Shown here: one piece after another, positions 40,267 through 64,000 of the stretch
How the letters are laid out: each line of letters opens with the position of its first letter
How positions within the stretch are numbered: position 1 is the stretch's first letter
Assembly: GCA_964252035.1 (NCBI GenBank)
Contig: OZ176205.1
Direction: 5' to 3' (one strand)
Source: Podarcis erhardii
Lineage: Eukaryota
Length of the DNA: 64,000 nucleotides
Translations under genes and position numbers: made by a program
Notes under the pieces: model-generated
The model's input: the letters and a program-made list of their open reading frames with translations, nothing else
The model's database searches: none
What the model was told of the DNA's origin: nothing

Positions 40267-40366
40267 ATGAAGGTTACAGCTAACATTTTAGTGGTGTTAT
40301 ACATACTCTTCTGCAAAATATGCCAAGTCGTCCTTTCTCACCATTGTTCAGCAGTTACAGAGCAAG
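40267..40366 (+). CDS. IL23R: IL23R signal-peptide exon (3' boundary uncertain)
   Basis: Acceptor tttttttgcag| at 40252; MKVTANILVVLYILFCKICQ resembles human IQWDAVIALYILFSWCHG; no clean phase-1 GT donor. Confidence 0.6.
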
Positions 40367-46300: not shown

Positions 46301-48443
46301 GTTCTCCCTCACTGGGAAATCTCTGCCTTGGGCAGCATCTGAAGTTGCGTTTTAAGAGACAGGGATATTGTTGGTATGCTGTCCACCCAGCTGCGCAACA
46401 TTCTTCCTGACCAACCTGGCTAAGGTCATCTTGAGAATGGTATTGGTGGATCCCAGACAGTAATTCTGGGTGACTTCAGCATCCATGGCGAAGTTGCCAT
46501 TGGCCTCACCGTTTAATCACAGAAAGGAAGAGGCAAGGGGCCACATGCCTCTAAAACAATGTTAGAACAATACCTACTTCTTATTAATAATATTTTGTTG
46601 CTTTTTGTTTTTTTATCTACTTTTATATGTTTAAATATTTTAGTATGGTTAACAAGGCTTTTAGGCCTTTTGGCTAAGATCAAGTATAATGCAATCTTCT
46701 TTTTCAAAAGCAGCTACTTTAGATTTTTAGTTTACAGTTACAGGAGAGTAATATGCTTCTTGACTGTTTGATCTTTATAGTTTTCAGGGAGAAGAAAATA
46801 AAACATTTCCGGCAAACAATGCTTCAGGTACCATCCCTCTGAATCAAATGGGGAAAAACAAAACATTTTATGTTGGGGTCTACGCTGAAAATCACTTAGG
46901 AACAAACAACTCAGAAGAACTGTATGTTCACCTTGATGATCTAGGTAGTGTGCAGTAATTTCTAAACTTTATTTTTTAAAAGCTGGTTTTGTTTTTAGTC
47001 TAGTATATGACTAAATTTATAAGATTAAGGTCATGATGGAAGATTCGAGAATAGAGTGGCTGGGGAAACCCAGACAGATGGGAGGAGTATAAATAATAAT
47101 AAAATAATAATAGTAATAATAATAATAATTACCTACAAGATGCTCCAACCTATTAATGCCTCCTAATAGGAATATTGGTAGCCAGCCATGCCCACCTACA
47201 GCAGACAAGTCTACACAGCCCCAAATTTCTCCTATTCCCCTCACCATCTGTCAACATTCTGCAGCTATTGAGCCTGCTGAGTACCCACTGGTCTATTTTT
47301 GTTGAGATTTGTCCCCTTAGTTTATTCTGTACTGCTGCAAACCTCTTGTTTTTACAGAGGCCCTCAGCACCTGAGTTTGCTATTAAAAGGAATGATACTT
47401 CTAATGGTTCACAGATACTTGGTGTATATTTATACACATGATCTTAGGTCCAATCTTTGCTCTGTGGATTCTTCTGTCCTGAGAGCTGAAGAGGTTCTTC
47501 CATGAGTGCCTCTTCCTTCTTGTGGGTGCAGGTTTCAACATGCCGTTGCTATAATTTGAAAGAGGCAGTAGTTTTATGGCTATAGTGCTTTGCTCAACTA
47601 CTGGAGACTGCATGATTGATGCCTTGTCTACATTAGGAGTGTGCTCAGATAACAGCTATGCATACTATAAAAGAGGAAGTACAGGAAACAGAATTGCATA
47701 TAGCCTGAAGTTACATTGGGTTTTGTGCAGCACACACCTTCCGCAATTCCAAACCCAACCACCCTAATTTCTTAATCTGCTGTTTATCCTATTGGGGATC
47801 AGAATAGCACTAAGAGATTGTTTCACTCACTGCTGAGCTGAAACAGATTAAACCAGGACCTGGCCTTCAGAATTCATACTGAGAATGTTTAGAAATTAGT
47901 TGTCCCATTTAATTCATCCAGAGCTATTTGGCTTGCTAGCTGGGTTCTGTGCTGCACCTGTCCTATGCATGTGGCAGACAGTGATCTTGGCTTGTGGTCC
48001 AATACTTAAATGCTTGAGGTAAAAAAAAGCTAGAATCAACTACACATAGAGCAACATCTTCTTTGGCGATCACTCGTAGCCGAGTAAGATTGTCTTCCAT
48101 AAACACGGTTTTAACAATGAGTCCGTAAGTGACTGTGGAGGCCAATTCTGGATCCACACAGGGGACATTGGTTCCCGGGTGGAAGTTGATCACGGTGTAG
48201 ATTTGCCAAGCGTGCCTTCCTCTTAGCACGTTTCTCCCTTGCGTTCTGAGTTCGAGTGTCTTCAAAGTCCATGACACCTTTGGTAAAGGCTGTTCCATAC
48301 ATCCCAGTTAGCCACTAGGACATAATTCCTCTGAGTTGGTTAAACTGGCCTTCTGAAATGTACTCCTTTTGCCTTTCCTCCAGTTGCTCCCTGACCTTGT
48401 TTGCAGACGACCTTGGTTTTAATTCTTGAAATGAAAGGCAATA

Positions 48444-48482
<39 letters not shown>

Positions 48483-51400
48483 ACTGGAATTAACATTTTT
48501 TTATCTCTTTTAGTGGTACCAGCTACACCCATTATTATCCGGATTGTAGACTCTACGTTATTTAAGACTACAATACATTGGGAAAAGCAAACTGCAATCA
48601 ATGAAACTTATTGTGAAGAACGATACAAGGAGAAGACAGGCGAAACTTGGCATGTGAGGCAACCCATTCTGGGTTTTGTATGTACCATAAGCAGTGGTTT
48701 GGCTGCCTCTTTTCATTGATTTTGGTGCTAAACCTTCCATACACAACTTTATATAGTAGTAAGATTTCAATAGCTTCCTAGGCAGTCTTACAAATACAAG
48801 AGTTTTACAAAGACATTGATGTGAAATGTTCCCTGCTCCTAGGATGCGTATGTTGCATATATTCATATACCTTCTGCGTTTTGGTGAAACTGATTTTTTT
48901 ATTTCTTATTGTACCCTTTTAATAGACAAATAGTATGTGTCCCTGACAGTTTACCCTGATGGAGTGTGGCCCTCAGCAGGAAAAAGTTTCCTCACCTCTA
49001 TTTTATGAAATAAACTTGCATCCAACAAAGACTTAGAGCCCATCTGTAGTACACTGTCTTTGGATGTTTATTATTAGTGTAAGGATTGATGTCACTGACT
49101 TATGGATACACAACTATATGTATACAGGGCCAGCTCTCCTGTATGTATACGGGGGGGATATATTAGTATACATAAAAAGTTCACACATAATATTTTGTAC
49201 CTACATGAAGAAAACATGCTACCTGGGATAGTATAGAGCAGCCTTCCCAGATGTTAGGTCCCTAGATACTATTGCACTACAGCTCCCTTCATTCCTAGCC
49301 AGCATGACCAGTTGCCAGGGATGATGGGAGTTTTAGTGCACAAACATCTGGGACTACAGTTGTTGGTATAGTGGCTAAAAGACCGAGCATAGTTGCTAAA
49401 AGGATGAACATAACCAGACAGTCCTAGTTTGAATCTGACTTTGTGCCATGAGCTCACAAGGTAGCCTTAGGCAAGCCACTCTTCAGCCTAAGTCCCCTCA
49501 TCTGCTACATGGGAGATAAGAGTGATTTGGCTTACAGGTGTAATTTTATATTGCTTGTGAAGCACTTTGAACACTTGAAAGTACTATGTTGTTGTTTATA
49601 CTAGGAATAGCAATACAGAAAGGAACACACACTTATTTGAGCTTGTTATCATGAGCATACAATTCATACTAACAATTTAAGTTGTAGGTATCTCTCTTCT
49701 ACCTCATGTAAAGTAACTGAGTGAATCAGACTACACCCAGCATAATTCACTCTAATAGTGGTATCCCATCCACTGAAATAGAAGAGAGATTCCTTTGGTA
49801 CAATTTTACTTATATTTAATTGTGAGTGGTCTGAACAGTCCTCATGCAATAAGATAGGTTAATCCAGACCAGTGTCTCCCATTTTTTTTATATAACAGAG
49901 GAACACTACCTTTCTGAACTGAAATTGAAAAAGGATGTTCAACAACAAAAACAAAAAGAAACTGAAGATACGCCTCACCTTTATAAATATACAGAGATCC
50001 ATGACTTTGGGCTCACAAGAGCAAATGCTTTGAAAACATTTTTTTATCTTGACACACCAGAACTTTTTTTTTATGCCGGTGATTTTGTAATCTCTGATCT
50101 AGACAGTGGATAGAACAATACATAATTGTCCTGTCGCTTTTCCATTTTAGGTTAGAAAATGGAATGCTGACTTTAAAAGGGAACATCAAACTGAGTACAA
50201 TTTAGATGCATACATGGAGTATGAGTTTCAAGTTAGATGCAAACTAACTCATGCCCAAAGCTTTTGGAGCAAATGGAGCGAATCTGCAGTGCATATGACT
50301 CCTGAGGCAGGTGAGTTTCACTGCTCTCTCTTCCCTGACCTCCGAGTCCTTTTTTCAGCTGTACAGAGAGGATTGTAACAGGAATGCTTCAAGGGATTTA
50401 AGCTGCAACAAGCCAACCAAGCATAACATTCTGAGCACATTTTCAGCACCAAGTGTGCAAAGGAAGCTGTACCTTAATCAGCTCAGGAACTGGAATACCT
50501 GATTATATCTTTGGTTGCGCTCTTATTTCCTGTGTTGTCTTCTACAGATTGTATCACTTTGGTAGCAAATATTACCTCATTGTGGTGTTATGAATCTTAA
50601 AAGTCCATGGAAAAATCCCCTGATAAGAGAGAGAGTATATACCCTATTTCAGTTTCAGTTGCACAATACAGTGTGAGCTGGAAATTCATTCATAAATCGA
50701 AAAGTGAAATGATTGTGCCTATCCTGTCTCTACAGCAGAGGAGTCAACAACAACCTTTCCCCCTCCTTTGAAGTTCTGTATGCAAATAAAAGTAAATTCC
50801 AGCACAATCCTATGCATCTTCACTAAGAAGTAAGTCCCATTGAGTTCAGTGAGGCATTAGGAGTGGGAAAGCCTCCTTAGACATTATAGAGAATCATAGA
50901 ATTGTCGAGTTGGAAGGGACCCTGAGAGTTATCTCATCCAACCCCCTGCAACGCAGGAGTTTCAATTAAAGTATCCATGACCTATGGCCATCCAATCTCC
51001 GCTCAAAAACCACCAAGAAAGGAGAGTCCACCACCTATCATGGGCGTCAGTTCCACTGCCAAACAGTTTTTACTGTCAAAAAGTTATTCCTGATGTTTAG
51101 TCAATCTCCTTTCTTGTAACTTGAAGCCATTGGTTTGGCTCCTACCCTCTGGAGCAGGAGAAAACAAGCTTGCTCCATCTTCCATGTGATGGCCCTAGCT
51201 ATTTGAAGATGACTATCATATCTCCTCTCACTCTCCTCTTTACCAGGCTAAACATACTCAGTTCCCCCAAATTGTTCCTCATAAGGCAAGTAGCCTTATG
51301 TAACCAGAAGTGGATTTTGTGTGTGGATGGACTATGAGCTTAGTTCTGGTACTTAAAACAAATTCCTACATCCAGAACTGTTTAGTTCTATGTCTTTTTT

Positions 51401-54400
51401 GCACTGACCTCTGGCAGATCTTAGGGTTCTGATCTTTTGTGAAAAGAAACAAAAGTAGATTTTGCAAGCCTGAAATCTGCTCATCCTAAGGGAGCTGTAA
51501 GGCCAGCAAGGCAGGCAAACAAACTTCCCATAGTGATGTGTGTACTATCTTCTATATGAAGCTCCATATTCAACACAGTAATTTAGAAGTTCAGATATTT
51601 ATTAATGAGTAAGTACACACACAATGTGTACAACATCTGTCAATTGGACTCCACTCTTTCTATCAAAGCTGACTACCCGATTTCGTGTGTGTGTTTTACA
51701 GCATCTTAAACTAAGCAGGCTATAAAAAAAAGAAGTTAAACAAATCTACTAGGCCAGGCCGAAATTGCTCTAAGCAGGCTCCCTCTAAGGGGCATGAGAG
51801 TTGCAGGGTGGGCAGCAGCACTAGGCTTTGCTTTGCCTCCACCTGCAGCAACAGTGGCAGCCTCAGAGGGCAGGGGAAGGCCACAACCAAGGATGGCTGA
51901 CAACAGAAGGTGAAACTCTGAGCCACACAGCCTCATTTGCCTAATGTGCCGCTGCAGTGCTCTTAGGCATGGGAAGGCAAACTAAGGCCCGGGGGCCGGA
52001 TCCGGCTCAATCACCTTCTGAATCCGGCCCACGAACGGTCCGGGAATCAGCGTGTTTTTACATGAGTAGAATGTGTGCTTTTATTTAAAATGCATCTCTG
52101 GGTTATTTGGGGGGCATAGCAATTTGTTCATTCCCCCCCCAAAAAATATAGTCTGGCCCCCCCACAAGGTCTGAGGGACAGTGGACCAGCCCCCTGCTGA
52201 AAAAGTTTGCTGACCCCTGCTCTTAGACCTCTAGGAGCCTTTATCACAATACAGTGGTACCTCGGGTTACATATGCTTCAGGTTACAGACTCTGCTAACC
52301 CAGAAATAGTAACTCGGGTTAAGAACTTTGCTTCAGGATGAGAACAGAAATCATGTTCCGGTGGTGCGGCAGCAGCAGGAGGCCCCATTAGCTAAAGTGG
52401 TGCTTCAGGTTAAGAACAGTTTCAGATTAAGAACGGACCTCCGGAACGAATTAAGTACTTAACCTGAGGTAATACTGTAAGCTGTTTTAGTAGAAATAGT
52501 AGTAGTGACCCCTGCTGGCAAAACAAATGAATAGTACAAAGAACTTACCAAGTGCTTCATCCATTTTTGAGGGGGAAATGGCTGGCTTTCAGGAATAAGC
52601 CTCCTGTTTTTACTACCTCTTGCTGCACCTTTAATACATGGCAGGGAGGCATGCATCAGCTAAAGCCGTTCTCCTCACTCCCCTAGAGAAAAGCTGCACC
52701 TCTTGAATTTGTTAGCTGTTAAAATTCTTGGAATTCAGCACAACCTATTTCTGTTTCAGCCAAAACTTGTGGGCATAGTCTGCCAATTAGCGATTACTTG
52801 TTGTTTTGTCAAATAATCAATTAGCCACCATATTGTTGCCTGAATCGGGGCTGACCCAAGATGCTTTGCTACCTGAAGCTCAGTTGCATCATTAAGTAGG
52901 CAGAGTGAGACTACCTCATTGCAGCTGGCTTTGTGTGCCATGAAAAGGCAGCAGTGGATTTTCATTTTATTTTTTTACTGCCTGGTAGGTGGGAGAGGTG
53001 CTTGAGGAATTTTCTGCCTCAGGCACCAGAAAACTTAGCTGGCTTTGGGGACTTTCTGGAGGTGACCAACAATTAGTGCCCAAATACTCGAAGTCAAGGC
53101 GTGTTTTATCTAATTGTGGTCTTGTTATTCTAGTAGATGAGGCAAATGATCTCACATGTCTCTCTTCCTACCTGGCACAGTCATAATAAATTTAATAACA
53201 AGCAATATCCTGCTCTTTCAGAACACCTAAAAATTGACTGCCTCAGGTGGCTGCCTCACTATGCCTAATGATTAGGGTCAGCCTGGCCTGAGGAAGTGAG
53301 GAGTTCAAAAGCCTAACTCACTAAGAAACAAAGCTGTATTCTTGGGAAATACTGTAATGTGGCCTAGCAGTAGAGACCACTAGTAATCCTGAATTCTGGA
53401 TAAGAGCCTGATAATGCCCCATTGGAAGCAGACTCATAGACAGGGTTATGGGCAGAGGCATAACTAGGCTCCCTTGCGCCCTTGGCAAGGAGATGTTGAT
53501 TGCCCAGGGCAGCAAAGGAGTGGCCCTGGGAGCATGCGGGAAGGCAGGCAAGCTCCTAGCCACTTCAAGCCTGAGTGGAGATGTGCAACTTTTGCACATA
53601 CACCCTGTCCCTACACCCTTGGCAAGGGCCAACCTTGTCAGCCGTACCCACCTCCAGGTACACACCTGTTTATGGGCTAAGCACCTTACAAGTCATTGTC
53701 AGCTCAGACAAGGGAACTTTCACAAAAAGTGGCCTATGGCTGGTATATTACCTTGAGACAGGTCTTTCATATGTGACTGAAATGCCCTTAAATTGCAGAT
53801 TTTGGTGGGGCAGTCTTTAGTGAGATTTCTTTAGTAACAAAATAGACCATCACTCCTTCCCCATACCTGATTCTAATAAATCTACATATAGATGTGGATA
53901 GAGATAAAAAAATAAAGAACACATTTGCACCTACTAGTGGCAGCAATAAGAGCTGATTCTAATGTATTTAAATATTCTTTCTTGTTAGTTTTTATGTTTT
54001 TAAAGGTAAAGGTAAAGGGACCCCTGACCATTAGGTCCAGTCGTGGCTGACTCTGGGGTTGCACGCTTATCTCGCTTTACTGGCCGAGGGAGCCAGCGTA
54101 CAGCTTCCGGGTCATGTGGCCAGCATGACTGAGCCGCTTCTGGCGAACCAGAGCACCGCACGGAAACGCTGTTTACCTTCCCGCCGGAAGGTGCTCTTTT
54201 ATATGACGTCCTTTTGAACTGCTAGGTTGGCAGGAGCAGGGACCAAGCAACGGGAGCTCACCCCGTCGCGGGATTCAAACCGCCGACCTTCTGATCGGCA
54301 AATCCTAGGCTCTGTGGTTAAACCCTTTTTATGTTTTTAGCTCTGTACTATTTGATTTTTCTTTTCTTAGCAGAGCCTGTGCTTTTCTGCCAAATAGGAT

Positions 54401-57082
54401 GGTCTAGTGGCAACCTCTAGTCTTTATTTCCCACGCTGCTGTAGATCACCATACACACAGAAAACACCTCATTAGCTCCAAATGTTCACAGTTAGGATTT
54501 TGCAATAGATGCCTTTGCTCTTTTATATATATGGAAGACCAAAACAACAAATAACAGACCAAGCCAGACTTTTTACCATGATTTAAATTGAAAGTCAGTG
54601 GGCAAAAAAACCCCTCATATTCAGATTTATTAATTATTATTATTTTTTGCATTTTGTTTGTTTATCTGCAGAACCTTCTTCTATACTCGATGTGTGGAGG
54701 TTTCTGGGGCCAACGTACCCGAATGGTAGCCAAGAGGTGGTCATCTTAATCAAGGTGATATTTTCCTCCTTTCCAGACTGAACACATTGCAGGTTAAGGG
54801 AGTCCAGGGTGGTTTTATTTTCACAAGGTCTAGAATTCAGAAAGGTATTAAAAATATAAGGCAGTTTCTTCAGTTGGGGCCAATACTGGGAAGAATCTAT
54901 CATGGGGTTGTATTTTGACTCAATAACATCACTCTAAAGGCTAGGAAAAAATACACAACTGCATACAGTAAACATTAGAAATGCCACTTTCTTACTTGAT
55001 TCTAAGAATTTATTTAAATAAGGAAAAACAGCTGGGGAGGGGACAACTTGGAGAGGTGAAGCAGCAGGGAAAGAGTTAAGTAACCCTTCCCCGGCTGCTT
55101 TCCCACACTCCTGGTGACTACAAACAGTGAGGCTCTTCTTTGCAGTGGCTTCTGTTGCAGTGGTTGGCAAGCAGCTAAGGAAATGCAGGTTTAATCACAT
55201 TTTCCCCTTAGCTGCTGTGCATGTGAAACTGCATGAACCCCCCCCCCAAAAAAAACCCCACAATGCAGCTTTCTAAAGGCAATTATCTTCCTTTCTCCTC
55301 CTTCTCTTCCTTCCCACATCCCAGCCATTTTTTCCTAAGGAGAGCAGAGGAAGAATTTTGGGCTACAGGGTGTTCTATGAAAACCAAGGAGAAATTGTGG
55401 ATTTATGTAAAATGACAGAAACAAAATGCCAGGTTTTGGTTCCCCCAGCAGTTACCACTCTCCATGTGACAGCACATAATTCAAAAGGAAGTTCCAAACC
55501 TGCGAATATTACAGTGAACCAACCTCCCCATAGTTTCCATGGTAAGATACTGTACTTAAAAACTTTTGAGAAATGGATAATGCATTGTTAAATTGTGTCA
55601 GAAAAGAAACTGACCCTATGATTTCCCAACATTCAGACCCCCACCAACTGTAAGCATAATGTATTAACGCACAAACAGGACTACTTTCATCCATTACTAC
55701 AATCCCAGTTTTGGAGATGCCAAACCAGATAAGTATTCCATTTCAGCAAAAGTATGAAAGATAAAGCAAAAAGCTGACATCTAAAAATATCAAATTCCAT
55801 TTTAAAATTATGTCTTAGCCATCATGACTTTTAAAAACAACAACTGAGGACATTATGGGAATGACTGCTATCAAGTTTAAAATGAGTTGGAATTCATAAA
55901 GGACTTGATTCCTGGTGTGCTGTGCAAAAGAGGGGGTTTCAGCAGATACAGCTATAGGTAGGGGTGGACTTTGGTACTATGGCGCCCTGAGCTAGGCCAA
56001 AAGTTGATGCCTCTCCACAGCCCTCAGGACATGCTGGGCTTTGGAAAGGAGGTGTGAGGTTTCCGGCAGGGTCCTACAGCCCTCCCACCTCCTCCCCAAA
56101 CTGGATAAGCACTAACTAGGCTTTGGAAAGGAGAACGGAGGGCTCTAGGACCCTAGGAAGCTGTCAGAGCCCTCACATCTCCTTCCCATGGCTGGGCAAG
56201 TGCTTACGGGTCTTCTCTTCTTGACAACCAGTGCAAAGAGAACCAGTCATGTTACCCTCAATCCGCCTCTGCTATATGACAAGCTACACTTGCTGAAATT
56301 CCCTCTTCTGTACAAAAGATGCAGGATCCCTGTTCTTTTTTCCACCTGGTCACCCTAGGTGAATGACAATCTAAGAAATACACCTTTGCAGTCCCATTAA
56401 TGCCAGAGGGGTTTACGACACGGGATTGCACTCCTAGATGGATCCTGTAGAATAATCATGACAATATTTTTGTCATTTCTGCTCTCTCAACATGACAGAG
56501 AAAGCTAGTACTGCAATTCCAAAGTTCTGTCCTGGTTTTGGACAAGCTTCTCCTTTCTAGCTTCACAGGATGCTTCTAGCTGTTCTGCTTTCGTAGGAAT
56601 TGATGGTTCCTAGAGAGTCCAGCTCAGTACAACAATCCCTGAGGAGCAACAGAAATTTTATTCCAGTTAACTATGTGATGCTAAAAGAGGACCTTATCAA
56701 AATTCTAGCTCTTTACCACCATCCACTTGGGTTGTAGATCGGCCTAGAAATGTTGAGAACACAGGTGCTTAACACAGGTGCCCAGGTTTACTCTCTGAGC
56801 TGATTCTCAGGGACGATTCACACCCCAGCCAGCACCTCTTTAATCTTCTACCCTCCGGCAGGAGATATAGAAGTATAATCAGTTGTACCAACAGGCTAAA
56901 AAACAGTTTCTATCCGTGGGCTGTTAGGCTGCTGAACAGAAAATAATATAGTGCAACTGACTTTCGGGGTTGGTGTGTTGTGCGACAAGCACACAGAGTG
57001 CAATGAGATTGAACGTTTGTGGGGGGCGGGAGGGAGGCTCGGTTACTTTCATTGTACACAGGTTGTACATTGACAATAAAGG

Positions 57083-57113
<31 letters not shown>

Positions 57114-58581
57114 CATTCAGCAACTGCAGAAGTGGTAAATATATTATACTTCCAAAATGTCCATCACTTTGATGAGCTTCTCTGGAATCCATGTGTGTAT
57201 ATGAAGGCATTTGTCTTATCTTGCTGCTGCAGGAACAGTAGATCAGAATTTGAGGAGAGGAATGTGGTCATAGTTGGATGACATCATAGGCAAGGGTCCT
57301 AGACACTCTTTTGCCCATTGGTGGATGAGTATAGCTAACAGGGAGCTTGCAGGAGGAGGAGGAGGAGGAGGAGGAGGAGGAGGAGGCGGAGGAAAAATGT
57401 TTCTCTGGGTTCTTTCCCTCCAGTTATACAATTTCCTTGATCCTTATTGACATTGATCTTTCTAGTGTATGCACTTAGCTTAAAGAAAATGTCTATATCC
57501 TCACTTGGTTGATTTCCAGTGTGCCAGATGGAGATAAAGAAGCTGCACTCCACTTTATGCTCCCCATCAATACACCCTTCGCTCATTTCAAGGGCACCTT
57601 CTTCCTATTGCAAAACTATTTCAAATATTTTGCTAGATTTTATACAACAGTCAAGTCATCCCTGATGCTTTTCCCTGTAGATTTCCCACCACCTACCAAC
57701 ATGCAAATGAACCGCGATGAACAGAAAGGGATTTCTGTTGTATGGGAACCTCCCCAACCAATTGGAAAAATAGTTTTGTGGTACATAGTGGAATGGACGT
57801 CTGCAGATTTCAGACGTGGACTTGTGTGGAAAAAAGTCCCCATCCAAAACACAACAACATATATCAAAGGTAAAATATAAGTCAACTCTTTTTAGGGGCC
57901 TTCATGATATGTTGGGCTGATGACATGCATAGCTTCTTAGACCCAGAATAATTGAGCCGCTCAGGAACAGCCAACATGGCGCCCTGCAGATGCTCTCAGA
58001 CTACAACTCCCATCAGTCCCAGACAACCTAGCTTATACTCAAAGACGATGGAAGCTGTTGTCCAATAACATCTGGAGGGCACCAGGTTTGCTACCCCAGG
58101 AGTGGATTTTGCAAACATGAAGAATCACTTTTAGTGAAATCTGTTTTCCTCACCCTTGGTCACCAAAAGACAACAAACATACCAAACCTACAAGCAAACT
58201 TAGCAAAGACTACCAAAATTAACATGGACAAATAGAGCTACTGTAGGAACAAAATATAAGAAACCCACATAGAGCCACCTGAGCTGCTTATTTGGAGAAA
58301 GGGATACAAATGTGATAAAACATTCTAAAATGACTGTCTGCTCCCCCACCCTTCCCCAAGAAGTCAGAACAAAATCATGGGATTAGAATTCATTGGTTCT
58401 TATTTCTGAAGTTTTACTCATGATTCCTTTTTAAAAAATTATACAGTAGAACTTATTTTCATGATTAAAATAAATGAATAAAACCTCATCCTTACAGAAA
58501 ATGTCAGAATGGGGCATAACTTCAACATTTCAGTGTATGTTGTGTATCAAGATGGCATCAGCAAGGCCTGTTCCATCCCAA
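40267..58581 (+). CDS. IL23R: Interleukin-23 receptor (long, gp130/IL12RB2-like ectodomain), 5' part; TM and cytoplasmic exons not in window
   Basis: Exons 40267-~40366 (signal peptide), 43156-43446, 44819-44942, 46781-46944, 48514-48653, 50151-50310, 54672-54754, 55325-55541, 57681-57869, 58498-58581; all from 43156 on are GT-AG and phase-consistent. INKTT, CVVYEYSDNMTCTW and HLDDLV match recalled IL23R (INKTT, CVIYEYSGNMTCTW, HLDDIV). Syntenic after C1orf141. Confidence 0.85.
41408..41770 (-). mobile_element. CR1 LINE 3' fragment
   Basis: taagaac..gagctgccagatt.ggccaatggcccttctagtccagcat.ctgttctcacagtggcca, a CR1 3' end (reverse complement). Confidence 0.65.
42640..42965 (+). mobile_element. 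CR1 LINE ORF2 fragment
   Basis: ggaccttggatgac..gagattgtagagaagctaaacc.attatttgca..ttcttcacggtagaagat; ccgggtccgaatggtatccac (PGPDGIH-like). Confidence 0.6.
43156..43446 (+). CDS. IL23R: IL23R Ig-like domain (D1) exon
   Basis: ccctcag|AT ACT ATA CAT TGT...GTG GGC C|gtaagt; within track ORF 43113..43454. Confidence 0.92.
44819..44942 (+). CDS. IL23R: IL23R D2 exon a (124 nt)
   Basis: ttgtag|AT TCA CCG GAC...TTG AAA AG|gtaaga; SPDMPANLTCVVYEYSDNMTCTWDPGKNT. Confidence 0.93.
46781..46944 (+). CDS. IL23R: IL23R D2 exon b (164 nt)
   Basis: ttatag|T TTT CAG...GAT CTA G|gtagtg; FYVGVYAENHLGTNNSEELYVHLDDL. Confidence 0.9.
48052..48300 (-). mobile_element. RTE-clade LINE 3' end
   Basis: FEDTRTQNAREKRAKRK...CPLCGSRIGLHSHLRTH (track ORF 48111..48302), an RTE terminal C2H2-like finger. 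Confidence 0.8.
48444..48483. repeat. (TAG)n microsatellite ~30 nt upstream of an IL23R acceptor
   Basis: Direct reading. Confidence 0.95.
48514..48653 (+). CDS. IL23R: IL23R D3 exon a (140 nt)
   Basis: ttttag|TG GTA CCA...TGG CAT|gtgagg; KTTIHWEKQTAINETYCEERYKEKTGETWH. Confidence 0.9.
50151..50310 (+). CDS. IL23R: IL23R D3 exon b with WSKWS motif (160 nt)
   Basis: ttttag|GTT AGA AAA...GAG GCA G|gtgagt; YEFQVRCKLTHAQSFWSKWSESAVHMTPEA. Confidence 0.93.
50886..51287 (-). mobile_element. CR1 LINE 3' end
   Basis: gaatcatagaattgtcgagttggaagggaccc..tccaaccccctgcaa, the canonical CR1 tail in reverse. Confidence 0.8.
51964..52219. mobile_element. hAT-type MITE
   Basis: ggcaaactaaggcccgggggccggatccggc ... 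aaaagtttgctgacccctg. Confidence 0.8.
52252..52477. mobile_element. Tc1/mariner MITE copy 3
   Basis: TA|cagtggtacctcggg...cctgaggtaatactg|TA. Confidence 0.85.
54000..54325 (-). mobile_element. Sauria SINE (Squam1), slightly 5'-truncated with an internal deletion
   Basis: Same sequence as 32668-33025; flanking direct repeat tttttatgttttta. Confidence 0.9.
54672..54754 (+). CDS. IL23R: Extra FN3 (D4) exon a (83 nt)
   Basis: ctgcag|AA CCT TCT...ATC AAG|gtgata; EPSSILDVWRFLGPTYPNGSQEVVILIK. Confidence 0.85.
55325..55541 (+). CDS. IL23R: Extra FN3 (D4) exon b (217 nt)
   Basis: cccag|CCA TTT TTT CCT...TTC CAT G|gtaaga; ESRGRILGYRV...VTAHNSKGSSKPANITV. Confidence 0.88.
56795..57110 (+). mobile_element. 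Rex1/Babar LINE, 5'-truncated 3' end
   Basis: ILRDDSHPSQHLFNLLPSGRRYRSIISCTNRLKNSFYPWAVRLLN*, then 3'UTR, caataaag and a (tat)n tail. Confidence 0.85.
57351..57393. repeat. (GGA)n microsatellite
   Basis: Direct reading. Confidence 0.95.
57681..57869 (+). CDS. IL23R: Extra FN3 (D5) exon a (189 nt)
   Basis: ctgtag|AT TTC CCA...ATC AAA G|gtaaaa; ISVVWEPP...WYIVEW...LVWKKVP. Confidence 0.88.
58498..58581 (+). CDS. IL23R: Extra FN3 (D5) exon b (84 nt)
   Basis: ttacag|AA AAT GTC...ATC CCA A|gtaagt; ENVRMGHNFNISVYVVYQDGISKACSIP. Confidence 0.85.
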
Positions 58582-59479
58582 GTAAGTACCATTGGGGCCA
58601 TTGTAAGGGGACTGGCACTATTTCATAGTGTACTGTGTTTGAGCTAAACTTCCTCTATGGTATGGTCATATCTCCCTGACTAAAAATATTTTTCAATGTG
58701 TTGATGTGTATATGGTAATTATCTTATTCAAACTGGAATAAGATAGTTTCGGGGCATTAACTGGAATGAAACCTTTCCTTAAAAGGTGTGGATGAGGACA
58801 TGTTTCATAAATAATGTACAGTACACACATTTGTTTGCTGTATGTACCCATATTGCTCTGTAGAAGATGTGAGAGCCATACTAATCTTTCATGTTCACTG
58901 TGTGTGTATATGTCAGAGCGAGCAGCAACTGGCCCTGATTCACTTGCGTACGTACAGGAAAAAACTAAAGATAAGCATGACTTTCACATAATTAGAAGAA
59001 ACATACTAAATCAGACATTCTTGCTCATTTCTGTTAACTTGCCTTTAGTTGTATTACATCCTTTGATTTTAAAGTTCTTCCATCAGAGATGCTGTATAAG
59101 ACTGTTAGATAACCAAAGCATTTCTACACCATGAATAATAATGCCTTGATAGGAATTAAGGCGAATTTGCCAAGGACAATGAAAAGTAATAAGTTTGCTG
59201 GAATGACTTTTATGCCCAGCCTTGATTAAGCAGATTATTGTGAAATAGTAGATACTGTACCACAATTATGTAAAGTGTTACTGGATTCCATTCAAAGTAA
59301 TACAAAGGCTTTAACTGCTGAATCAGGGGACCCTTCTGTCTATCAAGGTGTATTACTGTGCTCTTACATACAGATCCAACCCCTGTGTCCTCAATAATAT
59401 TAGTAATAAAAATTTTATTATGTTTTTTATATGTCCTGGAAGCCTCCCAGAGTGACCGGGGAAACCCAGCCAGATGGGT

Positions 59480-59800
59480 TTAATATTATCAAATTTATTA
59501 TCTGCCCTTCATCAACAGGTCCCAGGACAGTTTAAAACAGCTGAAAATTAAAAACAGTTAAGGCAGATTACAATCACAAGAACAGGGTGGTCCTGAAAGC
59601 ACAAAGGGTAAAGAGGTGTGTTTCCAGCATTTAGTGAAAGCTGTATTGTGAGGAAGCCAGATACACTTCTACAGGGAGAGGAGTCCACAACTTAGGAGCT
59701 GCCATAGAAAATGCACTCTCCTGGGCCACCACAACCCAAACTTCTGAGAGTGGTGGAACTACCAAGAGGGCACCCTCTGCTGATCTTAACACCCAGGAGT
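59480..59800 (-). mobile_element. L2 LINE 3' fragment
   Basis: gggagaggagtccacaacttaggagctgccatagaaaatgcactctcc..ggcaccctctgctgatctta. Confidence 0.55.
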
Positions 59801-61234
59801 GTCTGAAGGGACGCTCTCTTTAGGTAGCAGGCAGAAAACCAATGTAGCAGGCAGAAAACCAACAGATGGAAGTTTTCTGAACACGAAGATGGAGGAATTG
59901 CATGGGTTCCTTGGCAAATCCATAACTCCAGCCAAAAATGATGAATATTTCATACATACTAAAACCCTTGCAGAAAACATGTTCCTGAGATTGCTTCTCT
60001 AAAGCTCTAACTAAATTTAGAAATTACACCACAGGGTTAATAGCAGCAACATCCCAGTTATTCTAATAATTACCTTTTACTGCCACATCATATTGCATTT
60101 TCTTGTTAGAATTTGCTGTGGCTCCAAAGACCACAAGGCGGCAGTGTTTAATGAAAAATTATAATACGTACAGTAACTATTTTAGGGCTACTGCCGTTAC
60201 CTACATACAGTTCTGTTGTTTGAACAAAATCTCCATTTCTTAAGCATAATGGAGCACAATGCCCACTCAGTATTTCAGTCACAAATGACATTTTGGCCCA
60301 TTCACTCCTGCAGAAATGTGGAGCTATAAGGAGAACTAATGCATTCTTTTAGACTGGTGATGGTGAATATCTAATCATTCTACCATTTGCTGCTGGTGCT
60401 AGTAATATTTTCACTAGAAAAAGGAAAAGTCAAAATGACACTTTCCCTTTTTTGAACTGGAGCTCTCTTGTTTTTCTAATGCTACAAAGAAAATAGCACA
60501 CCCTCTGGAATGCGCTTCCTGAAGAACTGCTGCACATTGCTTCATGCTAAAGCTGAACCAGCTGCTATTAAGTCCCTAAATCAAAGGAATGTAAACTTAA
60601 CACCCCTAAATAAAATGGCAGTGATCCAGAGACATACACATGCAGTTCCCATTGAAAGCTATTGCAGAGTTTTCGGCAGGTGTGGGTGGGTTTACTAGAC
60701 ATGTCATCCAACTACAGAAATCTTCGTTGATTAATCAGTTAAGTTGCAACTGATTTAGTTAGCTAAACTGGTTAAAGTATGCCTATGAATAAAACATTTT
60801 ATCAGAAGAAGAAGAATAACATTTATGTTGTTTTTAAAACATTAATAAGCTTGGCAGATCCGATTGTATTGTCTGGAATGGACAAGTACTCTATCAAAAT
60901 AGATAAATAATAATACTTTCTACACCAGAATTTAATTCAATTACAGTTCCTACCAGGATGGCTACCAACAAACACTCTTTTTGGCAGGGCCAACGTCGGC
61001 ACCTGGTATCCTTAGGCAGCTGCCCTTACATCTCCTCCCCTTCCCCCTCCCCCCAATGCTGGCAGAGCACTTTGAGCAATGCAAAGCATTTGGAACAAGC
61101 CACATTTTCAATTTCGCAGAATGACCTCAACCTGGTATCACTCAGGGGCATTGCAGGAAATGGAAAGGGTGGCTTGATGCAGCTGTTTCACACTGCAGCC
61201 AAGTAAGCCTAGCACTGACAAAGAAGGGGGGCAC

Positions 61235-61375
61235 TTGTTGTTGTTTAGTCATTTAGTCATGTCCAACTCTTCATGACCCCATGGACCAGAGCACGCCAGG
61301 CTCTCCTGTCTTCCACTTCCACAGTTTGGTCAAACTCATGCTGGTAGCTTTGAGAACACTATCCAACCATCTCGT
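61235..61375 (-). mobile_element. RTE-BovB LINE 3' end fragment, interrupted by the copia element
   Basis: ttgtttagtcatttagtcatgtccaactcttcatgaccccatggaccagagcacgccagg...ccaaccatctcgt matches the recalled BovB 3' terminus (reverse complement). Confidence 0.8.
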
Positions 61376-61688
61376 TGTTGGTTTCTGCTCTCTTCACTGT
61401 GCAGCGAAGTGCTTGTCACAAGACAATATTTACATTCCACAGTCTGTACTGTTGGGTTTTCCCATGGGAAAGGGAGACTGGATGTGATGTACACTGGTTT
61501 CCTGTTTTTCACTGTTCTTTGCAGTTCAGTGTGTGCTTTAGAGGAGAGAGGATGCTTTTCTCTGCTCCGGCAGAGGCAAGATGTTTTTTCTGTAACATAC
61601 CAGCTTTGAAGTGTAAATAAAGCAATATACAGTATGTAGCACGTACTCCTCATCCTTCCGCTGTGCACGGGACTACTGCTTATCAACA
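61376..61688 (+). repeat. 5' LTR of copia element (313 bp)
   Basis: TGTTGGT...ATCAACA inverted termini, AATAAA at 61616-61621, followed by PBS. The 3' LTR is outside the window, so the boundaries are inferred. Confidence 0.8.
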
Positions 61689-61694
61689 ATGTTT

Positions 61695-61708
61695 GGTTAT
61701 GGGCCCAG
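61695..61708 (+). other. Primer-binding site complementary to an internal (anticodon-arm) segment of tRNA-iMet
   Basis: GGTTATGGGCCCAG is the reverse complement of CTGGGCCCATAACC in initiator tRNA-Met, as in Drosophila copia. Confidence 0.9.
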
Positions 61709-62110
61709 AAAAACGCAGTCATCTTAAGAATGGGCTCCAGAAGTCGAATCGGAGTGCCGGCAAAGGATCGGAATGCAGGGGGACAGATCGGAACGGAATC
61801 TGCTCTGCGCGTCAAGATGATTGATGAGGTATGTGCTACTGCTCCGGGCAGCCTGCCAGCTTCTAATTAATGGCTTTATGGCTGGACTTTGAACTTTTAA
61901 AGCCGTTTGCCGGGCAAAGTTACTATGCGGGGAAATCGAAAGTAACTTTTAAAAGTGCTCTTGGAGTAAAGCAGCTGCAGAAAATAATGACGCAGCACTA
62001 TTTAAGGCAGCATAGAGAAAGCACTTTAGAACTTTCCTTTTGAACTTGCCTTTGGAATGAAGCAGCACAGATGCAGCTTGTATAAAGCAGCATGATTTAA
62101 AGCAGCAGAC

Positions 62111-64000
62111 ATGACGCAGAAGGCTAATGCCAGAGTCATGATGGCCCTTCAGGATGCTTGTGGAATTCCTAAGCTCAATAAGAATAACTATGCGGACTGG
62201 GTTCTCTATGCAGAGGCTATTCTGCGGAAAGAGGGTCTGTTTGAAGTTATTACAGACACCCCCCCAGCTCCAGTCACAGATGCATGGGAAGCTAAAGATT
62301 CCAAAGCAAGGGGAACTCTTACATTGATAGTATCCCCAGAAGAGCTCTGTCTATTGCGTGATAAGACCTCAGCCAGACAAATTTGGGACGCTTTGAGAGA
62401 GGCTCACTTGAGGACAGAAGCTGGATCCACTATGTTTTACTTTAACAAGCTGCATAATATGGCTCTTGCTGAAGGTGGAGATGTGCGTAAACATCTGATG
62501 GAGATGCAGAATCTGAGACATGAGCTGCAACAGAGAGGACTCAACTTTCCAGAGGCTGTGTATTCCTTCATGATACTACAATCTTTGGGTTCAGGTTGGG
62601 AGTCTGTTGCGACTCAGATTGCTGTACAGCCTACTGCTCAGCTGACAGTGGACTATGTTACTGCCGTAATTCTCAATGAAGCAGATCGCCGTGGTGCTAG
62701 CTGCATGGGCAAGCGGGAGACTTCGCAGACGTCATCCCATAGTGCAGTGGAACCACCAGATGGCGCCAAAGCTTTGAAGGCAGTGAAATGCTACTCGTGT
62801 GGACATCTAGGCCATATGAAGAGGGAATGCAAAAATCCCAGGGCCAAGACAGAGCAGCGCAGTGAAAGCTCATCGCGTGGAAAAGGCCGAGGCAAAGGCA
62901 AAGGTCCAGTGTCCAGGACAACGCAGCCCAAGGCAATGGTCTCACGCTTCACTCCAAAAGTTGCAGAGGTCCAGAAGACGTCTAGATCTTTCTTCGTGGT
63001 TGATTCAGCAGCGACCCACCACATGTGCAACGATAAGCGACTGTTCGTGTCTTTTACACCGCAGGAAGGTGCGATTCACCAGGCGGATGACCACACAATC
63101 CCAAGTAAAGGCTACGGAACTGTTGTTCTTCACAGTTTGGACTTATCGATACAGAATGTGCTTTATGTGCCGGATGCCAAACATAATCTGCTCAGCGTTG
63201 GACAGCTGAATGAGCGGAATATTGACGTTTCCTTTAAGAACAAAAGGTGCATCATCACAAAGAAAAATGATTATGTATTGTATGCTGAATATGTTGATCG
63301 TTTGTATGTTTTGTATTATGATGATGTTGTGCAGGATGACACTTGTTGCATTGCAGGTACTAACAAAAGTTTGCATGCAGAATGTATTCACGATTTTCAT
63401 CGAAAATTTGGTCATTTGCATTTTGAGGCAGTATCTAAGATGCCTGCCTTGGTTGAAGGTATGACTATTAAACCCTGCAGGTACCACATGAAGTGCAAGG
63501 CATGCGCAGCAAACAAGGTAAAAATGGCTGCGAAAGGTAAGGTGTCTAGTAGGCAAGCTACAGAACCATACCAAATTGTTCATGCTGATTTGGTTGGGCC
63601 ACTAGCGCCCTCTTTGGGAGGAAACAGGTACTTCATGGTTCTCATTGATGCATTTTCCAGGTATATTTATGTGTACAATCTCAAGCAGAAATCAGAGGCT
63701 TTTCCTAGGTTCAAGGAATTCTGTGCTTGGTTGGAAAATGTGCATGGTAAGAAGGTAAAGACTCTTTTCAGTGATCGTGGGGGAGAATTCACTTCTCAGC
63801 AGTTTGAAGCTTTTCTGACTGAGAAAGGAATTCAACACGATTTGTCTAGTCCTCGCTCGCCATGGCAGAATGGACTTGCGGAACGAGCAAATCAGACATT
63901 GCTTCAAGGGTTAAAAACCTTGCTGCATGATGCTAATCTTCCAGAGAGTTATTGGGCCGAAGCTCTCTCATGTTTCACTTACAGTTATAATCGCAGGTTA
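62111..64000 (+). CDS. Copia gag-pol polyprotein, N-terminal 630 codons, uninterrupted (absent from the ORF track because there is no stop in the window)
   Basis: Hand translation: gag (IPKLNKNNYADW...IWDALREAH), zinc knuckle CYSCGHLGHMKREC, protease VVDSAATHHMC, HHCC (HRKFGH...CKAC), integrase HADLVGP / SDRGGEF / QNGLAER with D35E spacing. Confidence 0.95.
   Translation, partial: MTQKANARVMMALQDACGIPKLNKNNYADWVLYAEAILRKEGLFEVITDTPPAPVTDAWEAKDSKARGTLTLIVSPEELCLLRDKTSARQIWDALREAHLRTEAGSTMFYFNKLHNMALAEGGDVRKHLMEMQNLRHELQQRGLNFPEAVYSFMILQSLGSGWESVATQIAVQPTAQLTVDYVTAVILNEADRRGASCMGKRETSQTSSHSAVEPPDGAKALKAVKCYSCGHLGHMKRECKNPRAKTEQRSESSSRGKGRGKGKGPVSRTTQPKAMVSRFTPKVAEVQKTSRSFFVVDSAATHHMCNDKRLFVSFTPQEGAIHQADDHTIPSKGYGTVVLHSLDLSIQNVLYVPDAKHNLLSVGQLNERNIDVSFKNKRCIITKKNDYVLYAEYVDRLYVLYYDDVVQDDTCCIAGTNKSLHAECIHDFHRKFGHLHFEAVSKMPALVEGMTIKPCRYHMKCKACAANKVKMAAKGKVSSRQATEPYQIVHADLVGPLAPSLGGNRYFMVLIDAFSRYIYVYNLKQKSEAFPRFKEFCAWLENVHGKKVKTLFSDRGGEFTSQQFEAFLTEKGIQHDLSSPRSPWQNGLAERANQTLLQGLKTLLHDANLPESYWAEALSCFTYSYNRRL

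What the first reader, a model, noticed from the sequence alone, without database searches (positions are those of the whole stretch)
54672..58581. 'Tall' IL-23 receptor: extra gp130/IL12RB2-type membrane-proximal FN3 domains spliced onto IL23R D1-D3
Seen: exon 50151-50310 ends TPEA in phase 1 and continues in frame through four more GT-AG exons: EPSSILDVW..., ESRGRILGYRV...AHNSKGSSKPANI, FPPPTNM...VVWEPP...YIVEW, ENVRMGHNFNISVYVVYQDG. No second set of N-terminal receptor exons lies between 50.3 and 54.7 kb. Established: these motifs parallel IL12RB2 (EPTGMLDVW, EARGKILHYQV, AANSKGSSLP, VTWQPP, YVVEW, ENIKS) and gp130 D4-D5, whereas human IL23R has only Ig plus two FN3 domains and then a short stalk. 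Inference: squamate IL23R keeps the ancestral long ectodomain of the tandem IL23R/IL12RB2 duplication, so IL-23 signalling geometry with IL12RB1 would resemble the IL-12 complex, and the mammalian stalk arose by exon loss. An IL23R-IL12RB2 chimera is the alternative. This may already be implicit in non-mammalian annotations; I cannot check.
Basis: partly seen in the sequence, partly recalled or inferred. Interest (0 to 1): 0.75.

Follow-up and report, generated by a model that had tools for sequence, protein, structure and literature searches.

The report
Five-domain IL-23 receptor of a lizard
The four exons are real, spliced parts of a lacertid lizard's IL-23 receptor gene and encode two extra fibronectin-type domains that mammals lack. 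This taller form is the normal, already annotated state of the receptor in reptiles, birds, amphibians and fish.

Summary
Observation confirmed. Exons at 54672-54754, 55325-55541 (not 55340), 57681-57869 and 58498-58581 continue in frame from the IL23R D3 exon 50151-50310.

Intron-less contigs from public runs of two related organisms join 50310|54672 and 54754|55325.

The gene is IL23R:
- The D1-D3 region of the closest protein (Podarcis muralis, 88% identical) matches human IL-23R at 1.5e-61, against 1.3e-23 for IL-12Rb2.
- In orthologues the new exons sit between D3 and an IL23R-type transmembrane segment and tail.

A recent IL23R-IL12RB2 chimera is rejected. The D4-D5 tree follows the species tree inside an IL23R clade, and the AU test against grouping with IL12RB2 gives p = 0.0008.

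All sauropsid IL23Rs have two membrane-proximal FN3 domains plus a short stalk (WSxWS to TM 227-245 aa). Amphibian, fish and ray IL23Rs have three (306-324 aa), like IL12RB2 and gp130. D4 is the best conserved domain of the protein.

Novelty is low. RefSeq already lists about 780-890 aa IL23R proteins in dozens of non-mammals. Liongue and Ward (2007) reported FN3 domains in zebrafish il-23r. The scan flagged this same stretch once before.

The parts
40267..40366 (+). IL23R exon 1 (start codon, signal peptide MKVTANILVVLYILFCKICQVVLSHHCSAVTEQ). The donor is not canonical in this assembly (CAAG|TTAAGT).
   Evidence: tblastn with P0060, 91% identity. Python has CAAG|GTAAGT at the same place. Enumeration of GT-AG pairs.
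43156..43446 (+). IL23R exon 2, N-terminal Ig-like domain D1
   Evidence: tblastn 92% to P0060. phmmer against the PDB hits only human IL-23R at a significant level, 3e-10.
44819..44942 (+). IL23R exon 3, first half of D2 (cytokine-binding homology region)
   Evidence: Pfam IL6Ra-bind on the orthologue
46781..46944 (+). IL23R exon 4, second half of D2
48514..48653 (+). IL23R exon 5, first half of D3
50151..50310 (+).
   Evidence: Best PDB match is human IL-23R D3 at 1.3e-5. Covered by contigs of runs X1, X5 and X9.
50311..54671 (+). Intron 6. Holds high-copy repeats at about 50836-51387, 51940-52491 and 53964-54331, and no receptor exon.
   Evidence: No tblastn hit. Summed contig depth in these three blocks ranges from about 300 to 460,000 in the runs laid (table 2). 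No tRNA gene.
54672..54754 (+). IL23R exon 7 (B), first half of FN3 domain D4 (EPSSILDVWRFLGPTYPNGSQEVVILIK)
   Evidence: Joined to 50310 and to 55325 in contig record 24 of run X9.
55325..55541 (+). IL23R exon 8 (C, corrected start), second half of D4 (PFFPKESRGRILGYRV...AHNSKGSSKPANITVNQPPHSFH)
   Evidence: Best relative in 1.8 billion representative proteins is python IL23R at 1.8e-23.
57681..57869 (+). IL23R exon 9 (D), first half of FN3 domain D5 (DFPPPTNM...VVWEPP...YIVEW...)
   Evidence: Pfam fn3 at 4.4e-15 on residues 430-511 of the orthologue.
58498..58581 (+). IL23R exon 10 (E), second half of D5 (ENVRMGHNFNISVYVVYQDGISKACSIP), ends in phase 1
58582..64000 (+). Intron 10. The stalk, transmembrane and cytoplasmic exons lie beyond the window. 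The intron holds a sense-oriented Ty1/copia element (open frame 62096-64000 and on).
   Evidence: No hit for residues 516-809 of P0060 and no D6 relic. Pfam Retrotran_gag_2, Pol_BBD, rve. In python the stalk exon lies 4.3 kb and the TM exon 8.1 kb after D5b.

Best explanation
The window holds the first ten coding exons of the IL-23 receptor gene (IL23R) of a lacertid lizard. After the cytokine-binding module shared with mammals (Ig-like D1 plus the two-domain homology region D2-D3), the mRNA continues through four exons. These encode two further fibronectin type III domains, D4 and D5, each built from two exons and bounded by phase-1 introns. In orthologues a short stalk exon, the transmembrane exon and an IL23R-type cytoplasmic tail follow. 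D4-D5 are the rigid, bent 'legs' typical of tall class I cytokine receptors (gp130, IL-12Rb2, LIFR, leptin receptor). They hold the binding module at a fixed height and angle above the membrane, a spacer role that the unstructured stalk plays in mammals. They were inherited vertically from the ancestral six-domain IL23R. Sauropsids lost the third leg domain (D6) and mammals lack all three. Shown here: the exons, the splicing of D3-D4a-D4b, IL23R orthology, the FN3 fold, vertical descent, and domain counts across vertebrates. Inferred: the spacer and geometry function, and the order of the losses.
For: Exon borders and phases. Intron-less contigs from runs of two organism labels and three studies join 50310|54672|54754|55325. 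Exon C finds IL23R of python (73% identity, 1.8e-23), alligator, salamanders, caecilians and sturgeon, always at residues of about 350-415 of 813-873 aa proteins. RefSeq and UniProt hold IL23R of 778-894 aa in more than 60 squamates, turtles, crocodilians, birds, amphibians and fish. The closest is Podarcis muralis P0060, 809 aa and 88% identical over ten colinear exons. D1-D3 of P0060 scores 1.5e-61 (211 bits) against human IL-23R, 1.3e-23 against IL-12Rb2 and 1.6e-21 against gp130. The window's Ig exon matches IL-23R only. D3b to D4 aligns as one stretch with D3-D4 of IL-12Rb2 (5.9e-18), LIFR and gp130. In the D4-D5 tree, bony-vertebrate IL23R forms a clade (89/89) with species-tree order and IL12RB2 is apart (97/96). 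Forcing sauropsid IL23R D4-D5 together with IL12RB2 costs 22 lnL units, AU p = 0.0008. The AlphaFold2 model of D4-D5 has pLDDT 87.7 and pTM 0.83 and shows two seven-strand sandwiches. Foldseek gives TM 0.75-0.80 over both domains to the leptin-receptor FnIII module, gp130 D4-D6 (3l5i) and IL-12Rb2 (8odz_D). Ordinary FN3 tandems reach only about 0.38. D4 is the most conserved domain in every pairwise comparison, for example 62% to alligator against 46-49% for D1-D3. The python gene (L001) has the same exon order, followed by stalk, TM and tail exons. The spacer role of the mammalian stalk is from PMC7600943.
Against: The junctions D4b-D5a and D5a-D5b, and everything after 58581, were not seen in reads of this species. 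The runs laid are only guessed to be RNA and come from related organisms (97-98% identical), not certainly from the window's own. Contigs cannot exclude minor isoforms that skip D4-D5. RefSeq predicts D5a-skipping isoforms in turtles and one snake. Some models omit D4-D5: Podarcis raffonei 657 aa, Varanus Ensembl 555 aa and Pseudonaja 522 aa. The exon 1 donor reads TT instead of GT in this assembly, so the 5' end of the transcript is unresolved. No mammalian IL23R tail or sauropsid IL12RB2 sequence was in hand. Orthology of the tail therefore rests on RefSeq names and on the continuity of the IL23R clade. No functional data exist for any non-mammalian IL23R in the papers searched.
Confidence: 0.9

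Rival explanations
1. The exons at 54.7-58.6 kb belong to IL12RB2, or were recently captured from it. The 'tall IL23R' would then be an IL23R-IL12RB2 chimera or a read-through artefact.
For: In solved structures the best sequence match of D4 is IL-12Rb2, simply because mammalian IL-23R has no D4. An earlier scan note places an 'IL12RB2 Box1 exon' about 38 kb beyond the window, so the two genes are close.
Against: In all orthologues D5 is followed by an IL23R-clade stalk, TM and tail, not an IL12RB2 tail. The juxtamembrane motif is TPKWLFEDYP...NS, against RPQWCSREIPDPANS in IL12RB2. The D4-D5 tree puts lizard D4-D5 with amphibian and fish IL23R, and the AU test rejects a clade with IL12RB2 at p = 0.0008. 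D4-D5 identity to IL12RB2 is 24-33%, against 40-52% to amphibian IL23R. The python gene shows one continuous 40 kb gene with no IL12RB2 exons.
Confidence: 0.02
2. The whole gene in the window is not IL23R but IL12RB2 or another gp130-family receptor that the reader mislabelled.
For: The architecture (Ig, CHR, extra FN3) is that of IL12RB2 and gp130. Several frog, ray and coelacanth relatives are named 'IL12RB2-like' in RefSeq.
Against: D1-D3 is 38 orders of magnitude closer to human IL-23R than to IL-12Rb2. The Ig exon matches IL-23R alone. In the D1-D3 tree the 'IL12RB2-like' frogs group with salamander IL23R (96/92), while true IL12RB2 (elephant shrew, gar) forms its own clade (96/96).
Confidence: 0.02
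3. D4-D5 are cassette exons. The main lizard isoform is short and mammal-like, and the tall form is minor.
For: D4 (300 nt) and D5 (273 nt) are each bounded by phase-1 introns, so skipping a whole domain keeps the frame. RefSeq predicts isoforms lacking the D5a exon in Dermochelys, Chelonia and Ahaetulla. A few gene models lack D4-D5.
Against: The only contigs covering exon A in the runs laid continue into B and C. D4 is the most conserved part of the protein over about 400 million years, which is not expected of an optional cassette. The short models look like artefacts: P0076 reads through the donor at 50310 into the intron, and the Ensembl models are fragmentary.
Confidence: 0.06
4. The gene is decaying in this species, so the extra exons are relics without function.
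For: The exon 1 donor is TT instead of GT. A copia element sits in intron 10. Between close relatives, exons A-C show 7 non-synonymous against 6 synonymous differences.
Against: All ten exons are open, with intact splice sites other than that one donor. Spliced contigs exist in several runs of related lizards. An in-frame cryptic donor is available at 40345. A 7:6 ratio is still below the neutral expectation of roughly 3:1.
Confidence: 0.07

Closest known systems
Annotated IL23R of other sauropsids (Podarcis muralis A0A... 809 aa, Anolis carolinensis 817 aa, Python bivittatus XP_025027520.1 816 aa, Alligator 813 aa, turtles about 792-830 aa, birds about 778-816 aa)
   Same: Same gene, same ten exons and same order of domains: Ig, D2, D3, D4, D5, short stalk, TM, tail. 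Identity is 88% to Podarcis and 57-65% to other squamates.
   Different: Nothing structural. In this assembly the exon 1 donor reads TT and a copia element lies in intron 10.
Mammalian IL-23R (human, 629 aa; PDB 5MZV, 6WDQ, 8OE4)
   Same: Orthologous D1-D3: 1.5e-61 end to end over 291 residues, with a WSxWS-type motif.
   Different: [quoted passage not shown] The lizard has two folded FN3 domains plus a stalk of about 30 aa. No similarity between the lizard or turtle stalk and the human ectodomain chain was detectable.
IL23R of amphibians, ray-finned fish and rays (axolotl 863 aa, Pleurodeles 871, caecilians 873-923, sturgeon 867, flounder 885, Narcine 893; zebrafish il-23r in Liongue and Ward 2007)
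   Same: Same clade in the D1-D3 and D4-D5 trees. D4 and D5 align throughout.
   Different: They carry a third membrane-proximal FN3 (D6). WSxWS to TM is 306-324 aa, against 227-245 aa in sauropsids.
IL-12Rb2 and gp130 (tall class I cytokine receptors)
   Same: Same domain types and exon logic. The D4-D5 model superposes on gp130 D4-D6 and IL-12Rb2 with TM 0.75-0.77. D3-D4 aligns as one stretch.
   Different: Paralogues, not orthologues: 22-33% identity, separate clades, a different juxtamembrane motif and tail, and six rather than five ectodomain modules.

Membership tests
IL23R orthologue group | N-terminal Ig-like domain plus two-domain cytokine-binding homology region that is closer to IL-23R than to any paralogue | tested here: met
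   P0060 D1-D3 scores 1.5e-61 against human IL-23R and 1.3e-23 against IL-12Rb2. The window's Ig exon hits IL-23R only. Exon A is best to IL-23R D3.
IL23R orthologue group | WSxWS-type motif at the end of D3 | tested here: met
   WSKWS in exon 50151-50310.
IL23R orthologue group | Groups with IL23R and apart from IL12RB2 in phylogeny | tested here: met
   Trees of D1-D3 and of D4-D5 and the AU test. No mammalian IL23R or sauropsid IL12RB2 was in the trees.
IL23R orthologue group | IL23R-type cytoplasmic tail (juxtamembrane PKWL.ED.P, GYKPQIS, C-terminal YFPQ) | tested here: inconclusive
   Present in the orthologue P0060 and conserved from fish to birds. The exons lie outside the window. Comparison with a mammalian tail rests on memory only.
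IL23R orthologue group | Tandem position next to IL12RB2 | not testable with these tools
The window ends inside IL23R. The literature reports conserved synteny from zebrafish to human (PMC12162339).
IL23R as defined in mammals (short form) | Stalk directly after D3, with no membrane-proximal FN3 domains | tested here: not met
   D4 and D5 follow D3 in the transcript-like contigs and in the orthologues.
Tall gp130-type class I cytokine receptors | Three membrane-proximal FN3 domains between the binding module and the membrane | tested here: not met
   Only two are present. D6 is absent in all 44 sauropsid IL23R sequences aligned.
Tall gp130-type class I cytokine receptors | D4-D5 tandem with the characteristic fold and inter-domain geometry | tested here: met
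   AlphaFold2 model with pLDDT 87.7. Foldseek TM 0.75-0.80 over both domains to leptin receptor, gp130 and IL-12Rb2.

The most novel reading that the evidence does not exclude
The IL-23 receptor ectodomain was shortened stepwise in amniotes, from six modules (fish, amphibians) to five in sauropsids and three in mammals. In sauropsids D6 would have decayed into a one-exon stalk that still carries an F-strand vestige in crocodilians and turtles. D4, lost in mammals, is the most constrained part of the receptor elsewhere. This implies a leg-domain function, such as a contact with IL-12Rb1 or restraint of ligand-independent dimerisation, that mammals hand over to the stalk. This stepwise picture was not found in the papers searched. 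Liongue and Ward (2007) assigned the lack of FN3 repeats to tetrapods as a whole.
Probability: 0.5. Interest if true: 0.45.

Novelty: already known. Interest (0 to 1): 0.3.

Why it matters
For the window itself, this is ordinary annotation: a correctly spliced orthologue of a gene already modelled in close relatives.

The wider point is modest but useful. Textbook descriptions of IL-23R ("Ig + CHR + stalk") describe a mammalian derivative, not the vertebrate norm. The one paper that addressed this (2007) placed the loss of FN3 repeats at the base of tetrapods. The data here place it within amniotes, with sauropsids as a five-module intermediate.

Synthetic deletion of the mammalian stalk makes IL-23R signal without ligand (Hummel 2017, cited in PMC7600943). 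Natural receptors with two or three folded leg domains are therefore ready-made material for asking how ectodomain height and rigidity set IL-23 signalling.

The result also flags annotation errors:
- Short IL23R models exist in some squamates.
- True IL23R is labelled 'IL12RB2-like' in frogs and a ray.

Tried and rejected
1. Mammalian IL23R could not be obtained. All three word-indexed protein searches returned only non-mammalian IL23R plus a few IL12RB2, gp130 and LIFR. The queries were python IL23R, a 16-sequence profile, and the cytoplasmic region of P0060. The timing of the loss within mammals and the homology of the tail could therefore not be tested.

2. A profile of the sauropsid stalk searched against the PDB found no match to the human IL-23R ectodomain chain (about 330 residues of IL-23R by length arithmetic, so it may include the stalk) at E up to 10. 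The D3b-D4 query aligned to human IL-23R only as far as ...TPEAEP. From memory, parts of the human stalk resemble the turtle stalk and the start of D4. This could not be checked and is not used.

3. Relics of D6 exons, or of the stalk and TM exon, were sought in 58.6-64 kb of the window and in the python introns. Nothing was found above noise.

4. The ESM Atlas look-up with the cytoplasmic tail gave scores of 0.76-0.78, which is uninformative.

5. tRNA and SINE heads in introns 6-9 (50300-58600): ARAGORN found none.

6. Pfam on five other long ORFs of the window (4-20 kb) gave no family.

7. Python locus with 10 kb flanks: no neighbouring IL12RB2 within reach.

Each was searched by reference, and the natural orthologue P0060 stood in where a continuous protein was needed.

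10. The copia element was only observed.

Full report
THE OBSERVATION

- Exon 50151-50310 encodes the second half of a cytokine-receptor D3 domain with WSKWS. It ends ...HMTPEA plus one base.
- Four further exons follow with AG/GT borders and matching phases: 54672-54754, 55325-55541, 57681-57869 and 58498-58581.

The one correction is the acceptor of the second of these. The AG at 55323-55324, behind a long pyrimidine tract, is the one used. It adds PFFPK in frame. This is shown by the closest orthologous protein (...VVILIKPFFPKESRGRILGY) and by transcript-like contigs.

IS IT ONE GENE, AND IS IT SPLICED THAT WAY?

tblastn with python IL23R (P0001) and Podarcis muralis IL23R (P0060) maps ten colinear coding exons on the + strand between 40.3 and 58.6 kb. 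In order they are signal peptide, Ig-like D1, D2a, D2b, D3a, D3b, D4a, D4b, D5a and D5b.

IL12RB2, gp130, GCSFR and amphibian or fish IL23R queries hit only these same exons. There is therefore no second set of receptor exons in intron 6 or anywhere else in the window.

The look-up of sequencing runs found no run on record as RNA. It did find nine small runs holding 6-7% of the sampled words, about the exonic share of the stretch. Four of them were laid on 50100-55600.
- Record 24 of run X9 (2922 nt) lies on 50151-50306, 54668-54752 and 55323-55541 at consecutive record positions 435-590, 591-675 and 676-894.
- The 4 and 2 letters at the joints fit either side, so the joints are the canonical 50310|54672 and 54754|55325.
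- Record 1 of run X1 (1099 nt, another organism label and study) has exon A and exon C separated by exactly 85 letters.
- Contigs without introns can only come from spliced RNA, so the D3 to D4a to D4b path is real in close relatives (97-98% identical).

They rest on the orthologous proteins.

WHAT GENE IS IT?

The exhaustive representative search with exon C (67 aa) returned python IL23R as its best hit (816 aa, 73% identity, 1.8e-23). Next came IL23R of alligator, salamanders, caecilians, sturgeon and birds, always at residues of about 350-415 of long proteins.

Two word-indexed searches then listed more than 60 annotated IL23R proteins of 778-894 aa from squamates, turtles, crocodilians, birds, amphibians and fish. 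The closest is Podarcis muralis (809 aa, 88% identical over the window's exons), so the window comes from a lacertid lizard.

Against solved structures, D1-D3 of that orthologue matches human IL-23R end to end at 1.5e-61. IL-12Rb2 scores 1.3e-23 and gp130 1.6e-21. The window's own Ig exon matches IL-23R and nothing else of note.

In the orthologues, D5 is followed by a short stalk, a transmembrane helix, the juxtamembrane motif TPKWLFEDYP, and a tail that is conserved from fish to birds. This tail is unlike that of IL12RB2.

The python gene, fetched with flanks, shows the same order in one 40 kb gene: D5b, a separate phase 1-1 stalk exon, the TM exon, a juxtamembrane exon and a large last exon. 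In the window these last exons lie beyond 64 kb.

WHAT ARE THE EXTRA EXONS?

Pfam calls fn3 on D5 (4.4e-15). D3b plus D4 aligns as one unbroken stretch with D3-D4 of IL-12Rb2 (5.9e-18), LIFR and gp130.

An AlphaFold2 model of D4-D5 was built on 54 natural sequences. It has pLDDT 87.7 and pTM 0.83 and shows two seven-stranded sandwiches.

Foldseek against the PDB ranks first the leptin-receptor FnIII module, gp130 D4-D6 (3l5i), OSMR/LIFR complexes and IL-12Rb2 (8odz_D, the highest identity at 27-28%). TM-scores are 0.75-0.80 over both domains. Ordinary FN3 tandems such as titin, fibronectin and contactin reach only about 0.38, which means one domain. The pair therefore has the inter-domain geometry of the 'legs' of tall cytokine receptors.

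CHIMERA OR VERTICAL DESCENT?

Separate maximum-likelihood trees were built for D1-D3 and for D4-D5. Each has 21 rows with GCSFR as outgroup. No mammalian IL23R and no sauropsid IL12RB2 were available.
- In the D4-D5 tree, bony-vertebrate IL23R forms a clade (89/89). Its inner order follows the species tree: fish, then amphibians, then squamates against turtles, crocodilians and birds. IL12RB2 of elephant shrew and gar forms its own clade (97/96).
- Holding sauropsid IL23R D4-D5 together with IL12RB2 costs 22 log-likelihood units and is rejected (AU p = 0.0008).
- The D1-D3 tree agrees. It also shows that the frog proteins named 'IL12RB2-like' are IL23R orthologues (96/92 with salamander IL23R).

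The D4-D5 exons were therefore inherited inside the IL23R lineage and were not borrowed from the neighbour.

The distance from WSxWS to the transmembrane helix separates the groups cleanly:
- 227-245 aa in every sauropsid IL23R;
- 306-324 aa in salamander, caecilian, frog and ray IL23R;
- 315 aa in IL12RB2 and 313 aa in gp130.

Pfam finds a third fn3 at about 527-605 in axolotl and sturgeon IL23R but none in sauropsids. The alignment shows a whole domain (D6) missing from all 44 sauropsid sequences aligned. It is replaced by a stalk of 25-40 aa.

The lizard receptor therefore has five ectodomain modules. The ancestral state is six and the mammalian state is three.

An HMM of amphibian and fish D6 scores the crocodilian and some turtle stalks above 1640 shuffled controls. 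Scores were 7.0, 6.1 and 3.0 bits, with empirical p from below 0.001 to 0.004. These stalks carry ...IYTDPVIVSTATGE..., which aligns with the F strand ...FYTAYITASTAAGEGP.... Squamate and bird stalks do not score above the controls. This suggests, weakly, that the sauropsid stalk exon is a remnant of D6.

CONSTRAINT

D4 is the best conserved domain of the protein in every comparison. Podarcis against alligator gives 62%, against 46-49% for D1-D3. Against axolotl the figures are 50% and 30-37%, and against sturgeon 47% and 27-35%. Between close lacertids, exons A-C differ at 7 non-synonymous and 6 synonymous places. The leg domains are therefore not idle spacers in non-mammals.

WHAT IS KNOWN

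Floss et al. [quoted passage not shown] They describe the stalk as a spacer whose deletion gives autonomous signalling.

[quoted passage not shown] A 405-species survey of the IL-12 family (PMC12162339) confirms IL23R-IL12RB2 synteny and lists p19 in a snake. In the passages read, it does not describe the domain difference.

No paper found in five searches describes the sauropsid form. The architecture is thus already in public annotation and, for fish, in print. The refinement that the loss lies within amniotes, with sauropsids as a five-module intermediate, seems not to have been spelled out.

HOW IT MOST LIKELY WORKS

Shown here:
- The receptor has a mammal-like IL-23-binding head (D1-D3).
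- Two folded FN3 legs follow, with gp130-like geometry.
- A short acidic or glycine-rich stalk follows, then one TM helix and an IL23R tail.

Inferred:
- D4-D5 set the height and angle of the head relative to the membrane and to IL-12Rb1, the five-FN3 partner. This is the job done by the stalk in mammals.
- The strong conservation of D4 hints at a specific contact.

Not tested: ligand binding, partner use and signalling in any sauropsid.

LIMITS

- The runs laid are only guessed to be RNA and come from related organisms.
- Minor skipping isoforms cannot be excluded.
- No mammalian IL23R beyond D3 and no sauropsid IL12RB2 were available.
The natural orthologue P0060 was used instead.
- The exon 1 donor reads TT where python has GT. 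This leaves the 5' end of the transcript unresolved in this assembly.
The copia element in intron 10 was only observed.

VERDICT

The chimera alternative is rejected. The novelty is low, because the tall form is the annotated norm outside mammals. The scan had flagged this same stretch once before (s1-224447).

Noticed in passing
window 40360-40372: The donor of the signal-peptide exon reads CAAG|TTAAGTATTAT, where python IL23R has CAAG|GTAAGTATTAT (a +1 G to T change). No canonical GT-AG pair reproduces the orthologues' ...TEQ|DTIHC junction. The only in-frame canonical option is a cryptic donor at 40345|40346. This could be an assembly error, a polymorphism, or a lacertid change of the 5' end.
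   Followed up: partly
window 61400-64000 (open frame 62096-64000, runs off the edge): A sense-oriented Ty1/copia retrotransposon lies in IL23R intron 10. It has an uninterrupted gag, zinc-knuckle, protease-barrel and integrase frame of at least 635 aa (Pfam Retrotran_gag_2 2.7e-29, rve 3.3e-15). Earlier readers noted it too. It was only observed here.
   Followed up: partly
window 50836-51387, 51940-52491, 53964-54331: Three repeat blocks in intron 6 collect summed contig depth from about 300 to 460,000 in the small transcript-like runs, with many variants and joints between them. They look like highly expressed interspersed repeats. ARAGORN finds no tRNA head.
   Followed up: no
P0076 (Podarcis raffonei RefSeq IL23R, 657 aa): This model reads through the donor equivalent to 50310 into the intron (PEAGEFHCSLFPDL...). 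It omits D4-D5 and starts with a 5' exon that lacks a signal peptide, so it is probably a mis-model. Ensembl models of Varanus (555 aa) and Pseudonaja (522 aa) also lack D4-D5.
   Followed up: partly
P0088, P0090 (Dermochelys), P0089 (Chelonia), P0056 (Ahaetulla): RefSeq predicts isoforms that skip exactly the D5a exon (66-67 aa, in frame). This would leave half an FN3 domain. Two of the turtle isoforms also drop a 25-aa stalk segment.
   Followed up: partly
P0015/P0042 (Discoglossus), P0024 (Spea), P0021/P0128 (Narcine), P0020 (Latimeria): The frog proteins named 'interleukin-12 receptor subunit beta-2-like' fall in the IL23R clade in both trees. The ray protein stays outside the IL12RB2 clade, and its placement within IL23R is not rejected. 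The coelacanth fragment was not placed in a tree. The tall architecture probably misled the naming.
   Followed up: partly
It may be that exon rather than a relic.
   Followed up: no
window 57085-57112 and 57352-57392: (ATT)n and (GGA)n microsatellites lie in intron 8.
   Followed up: no
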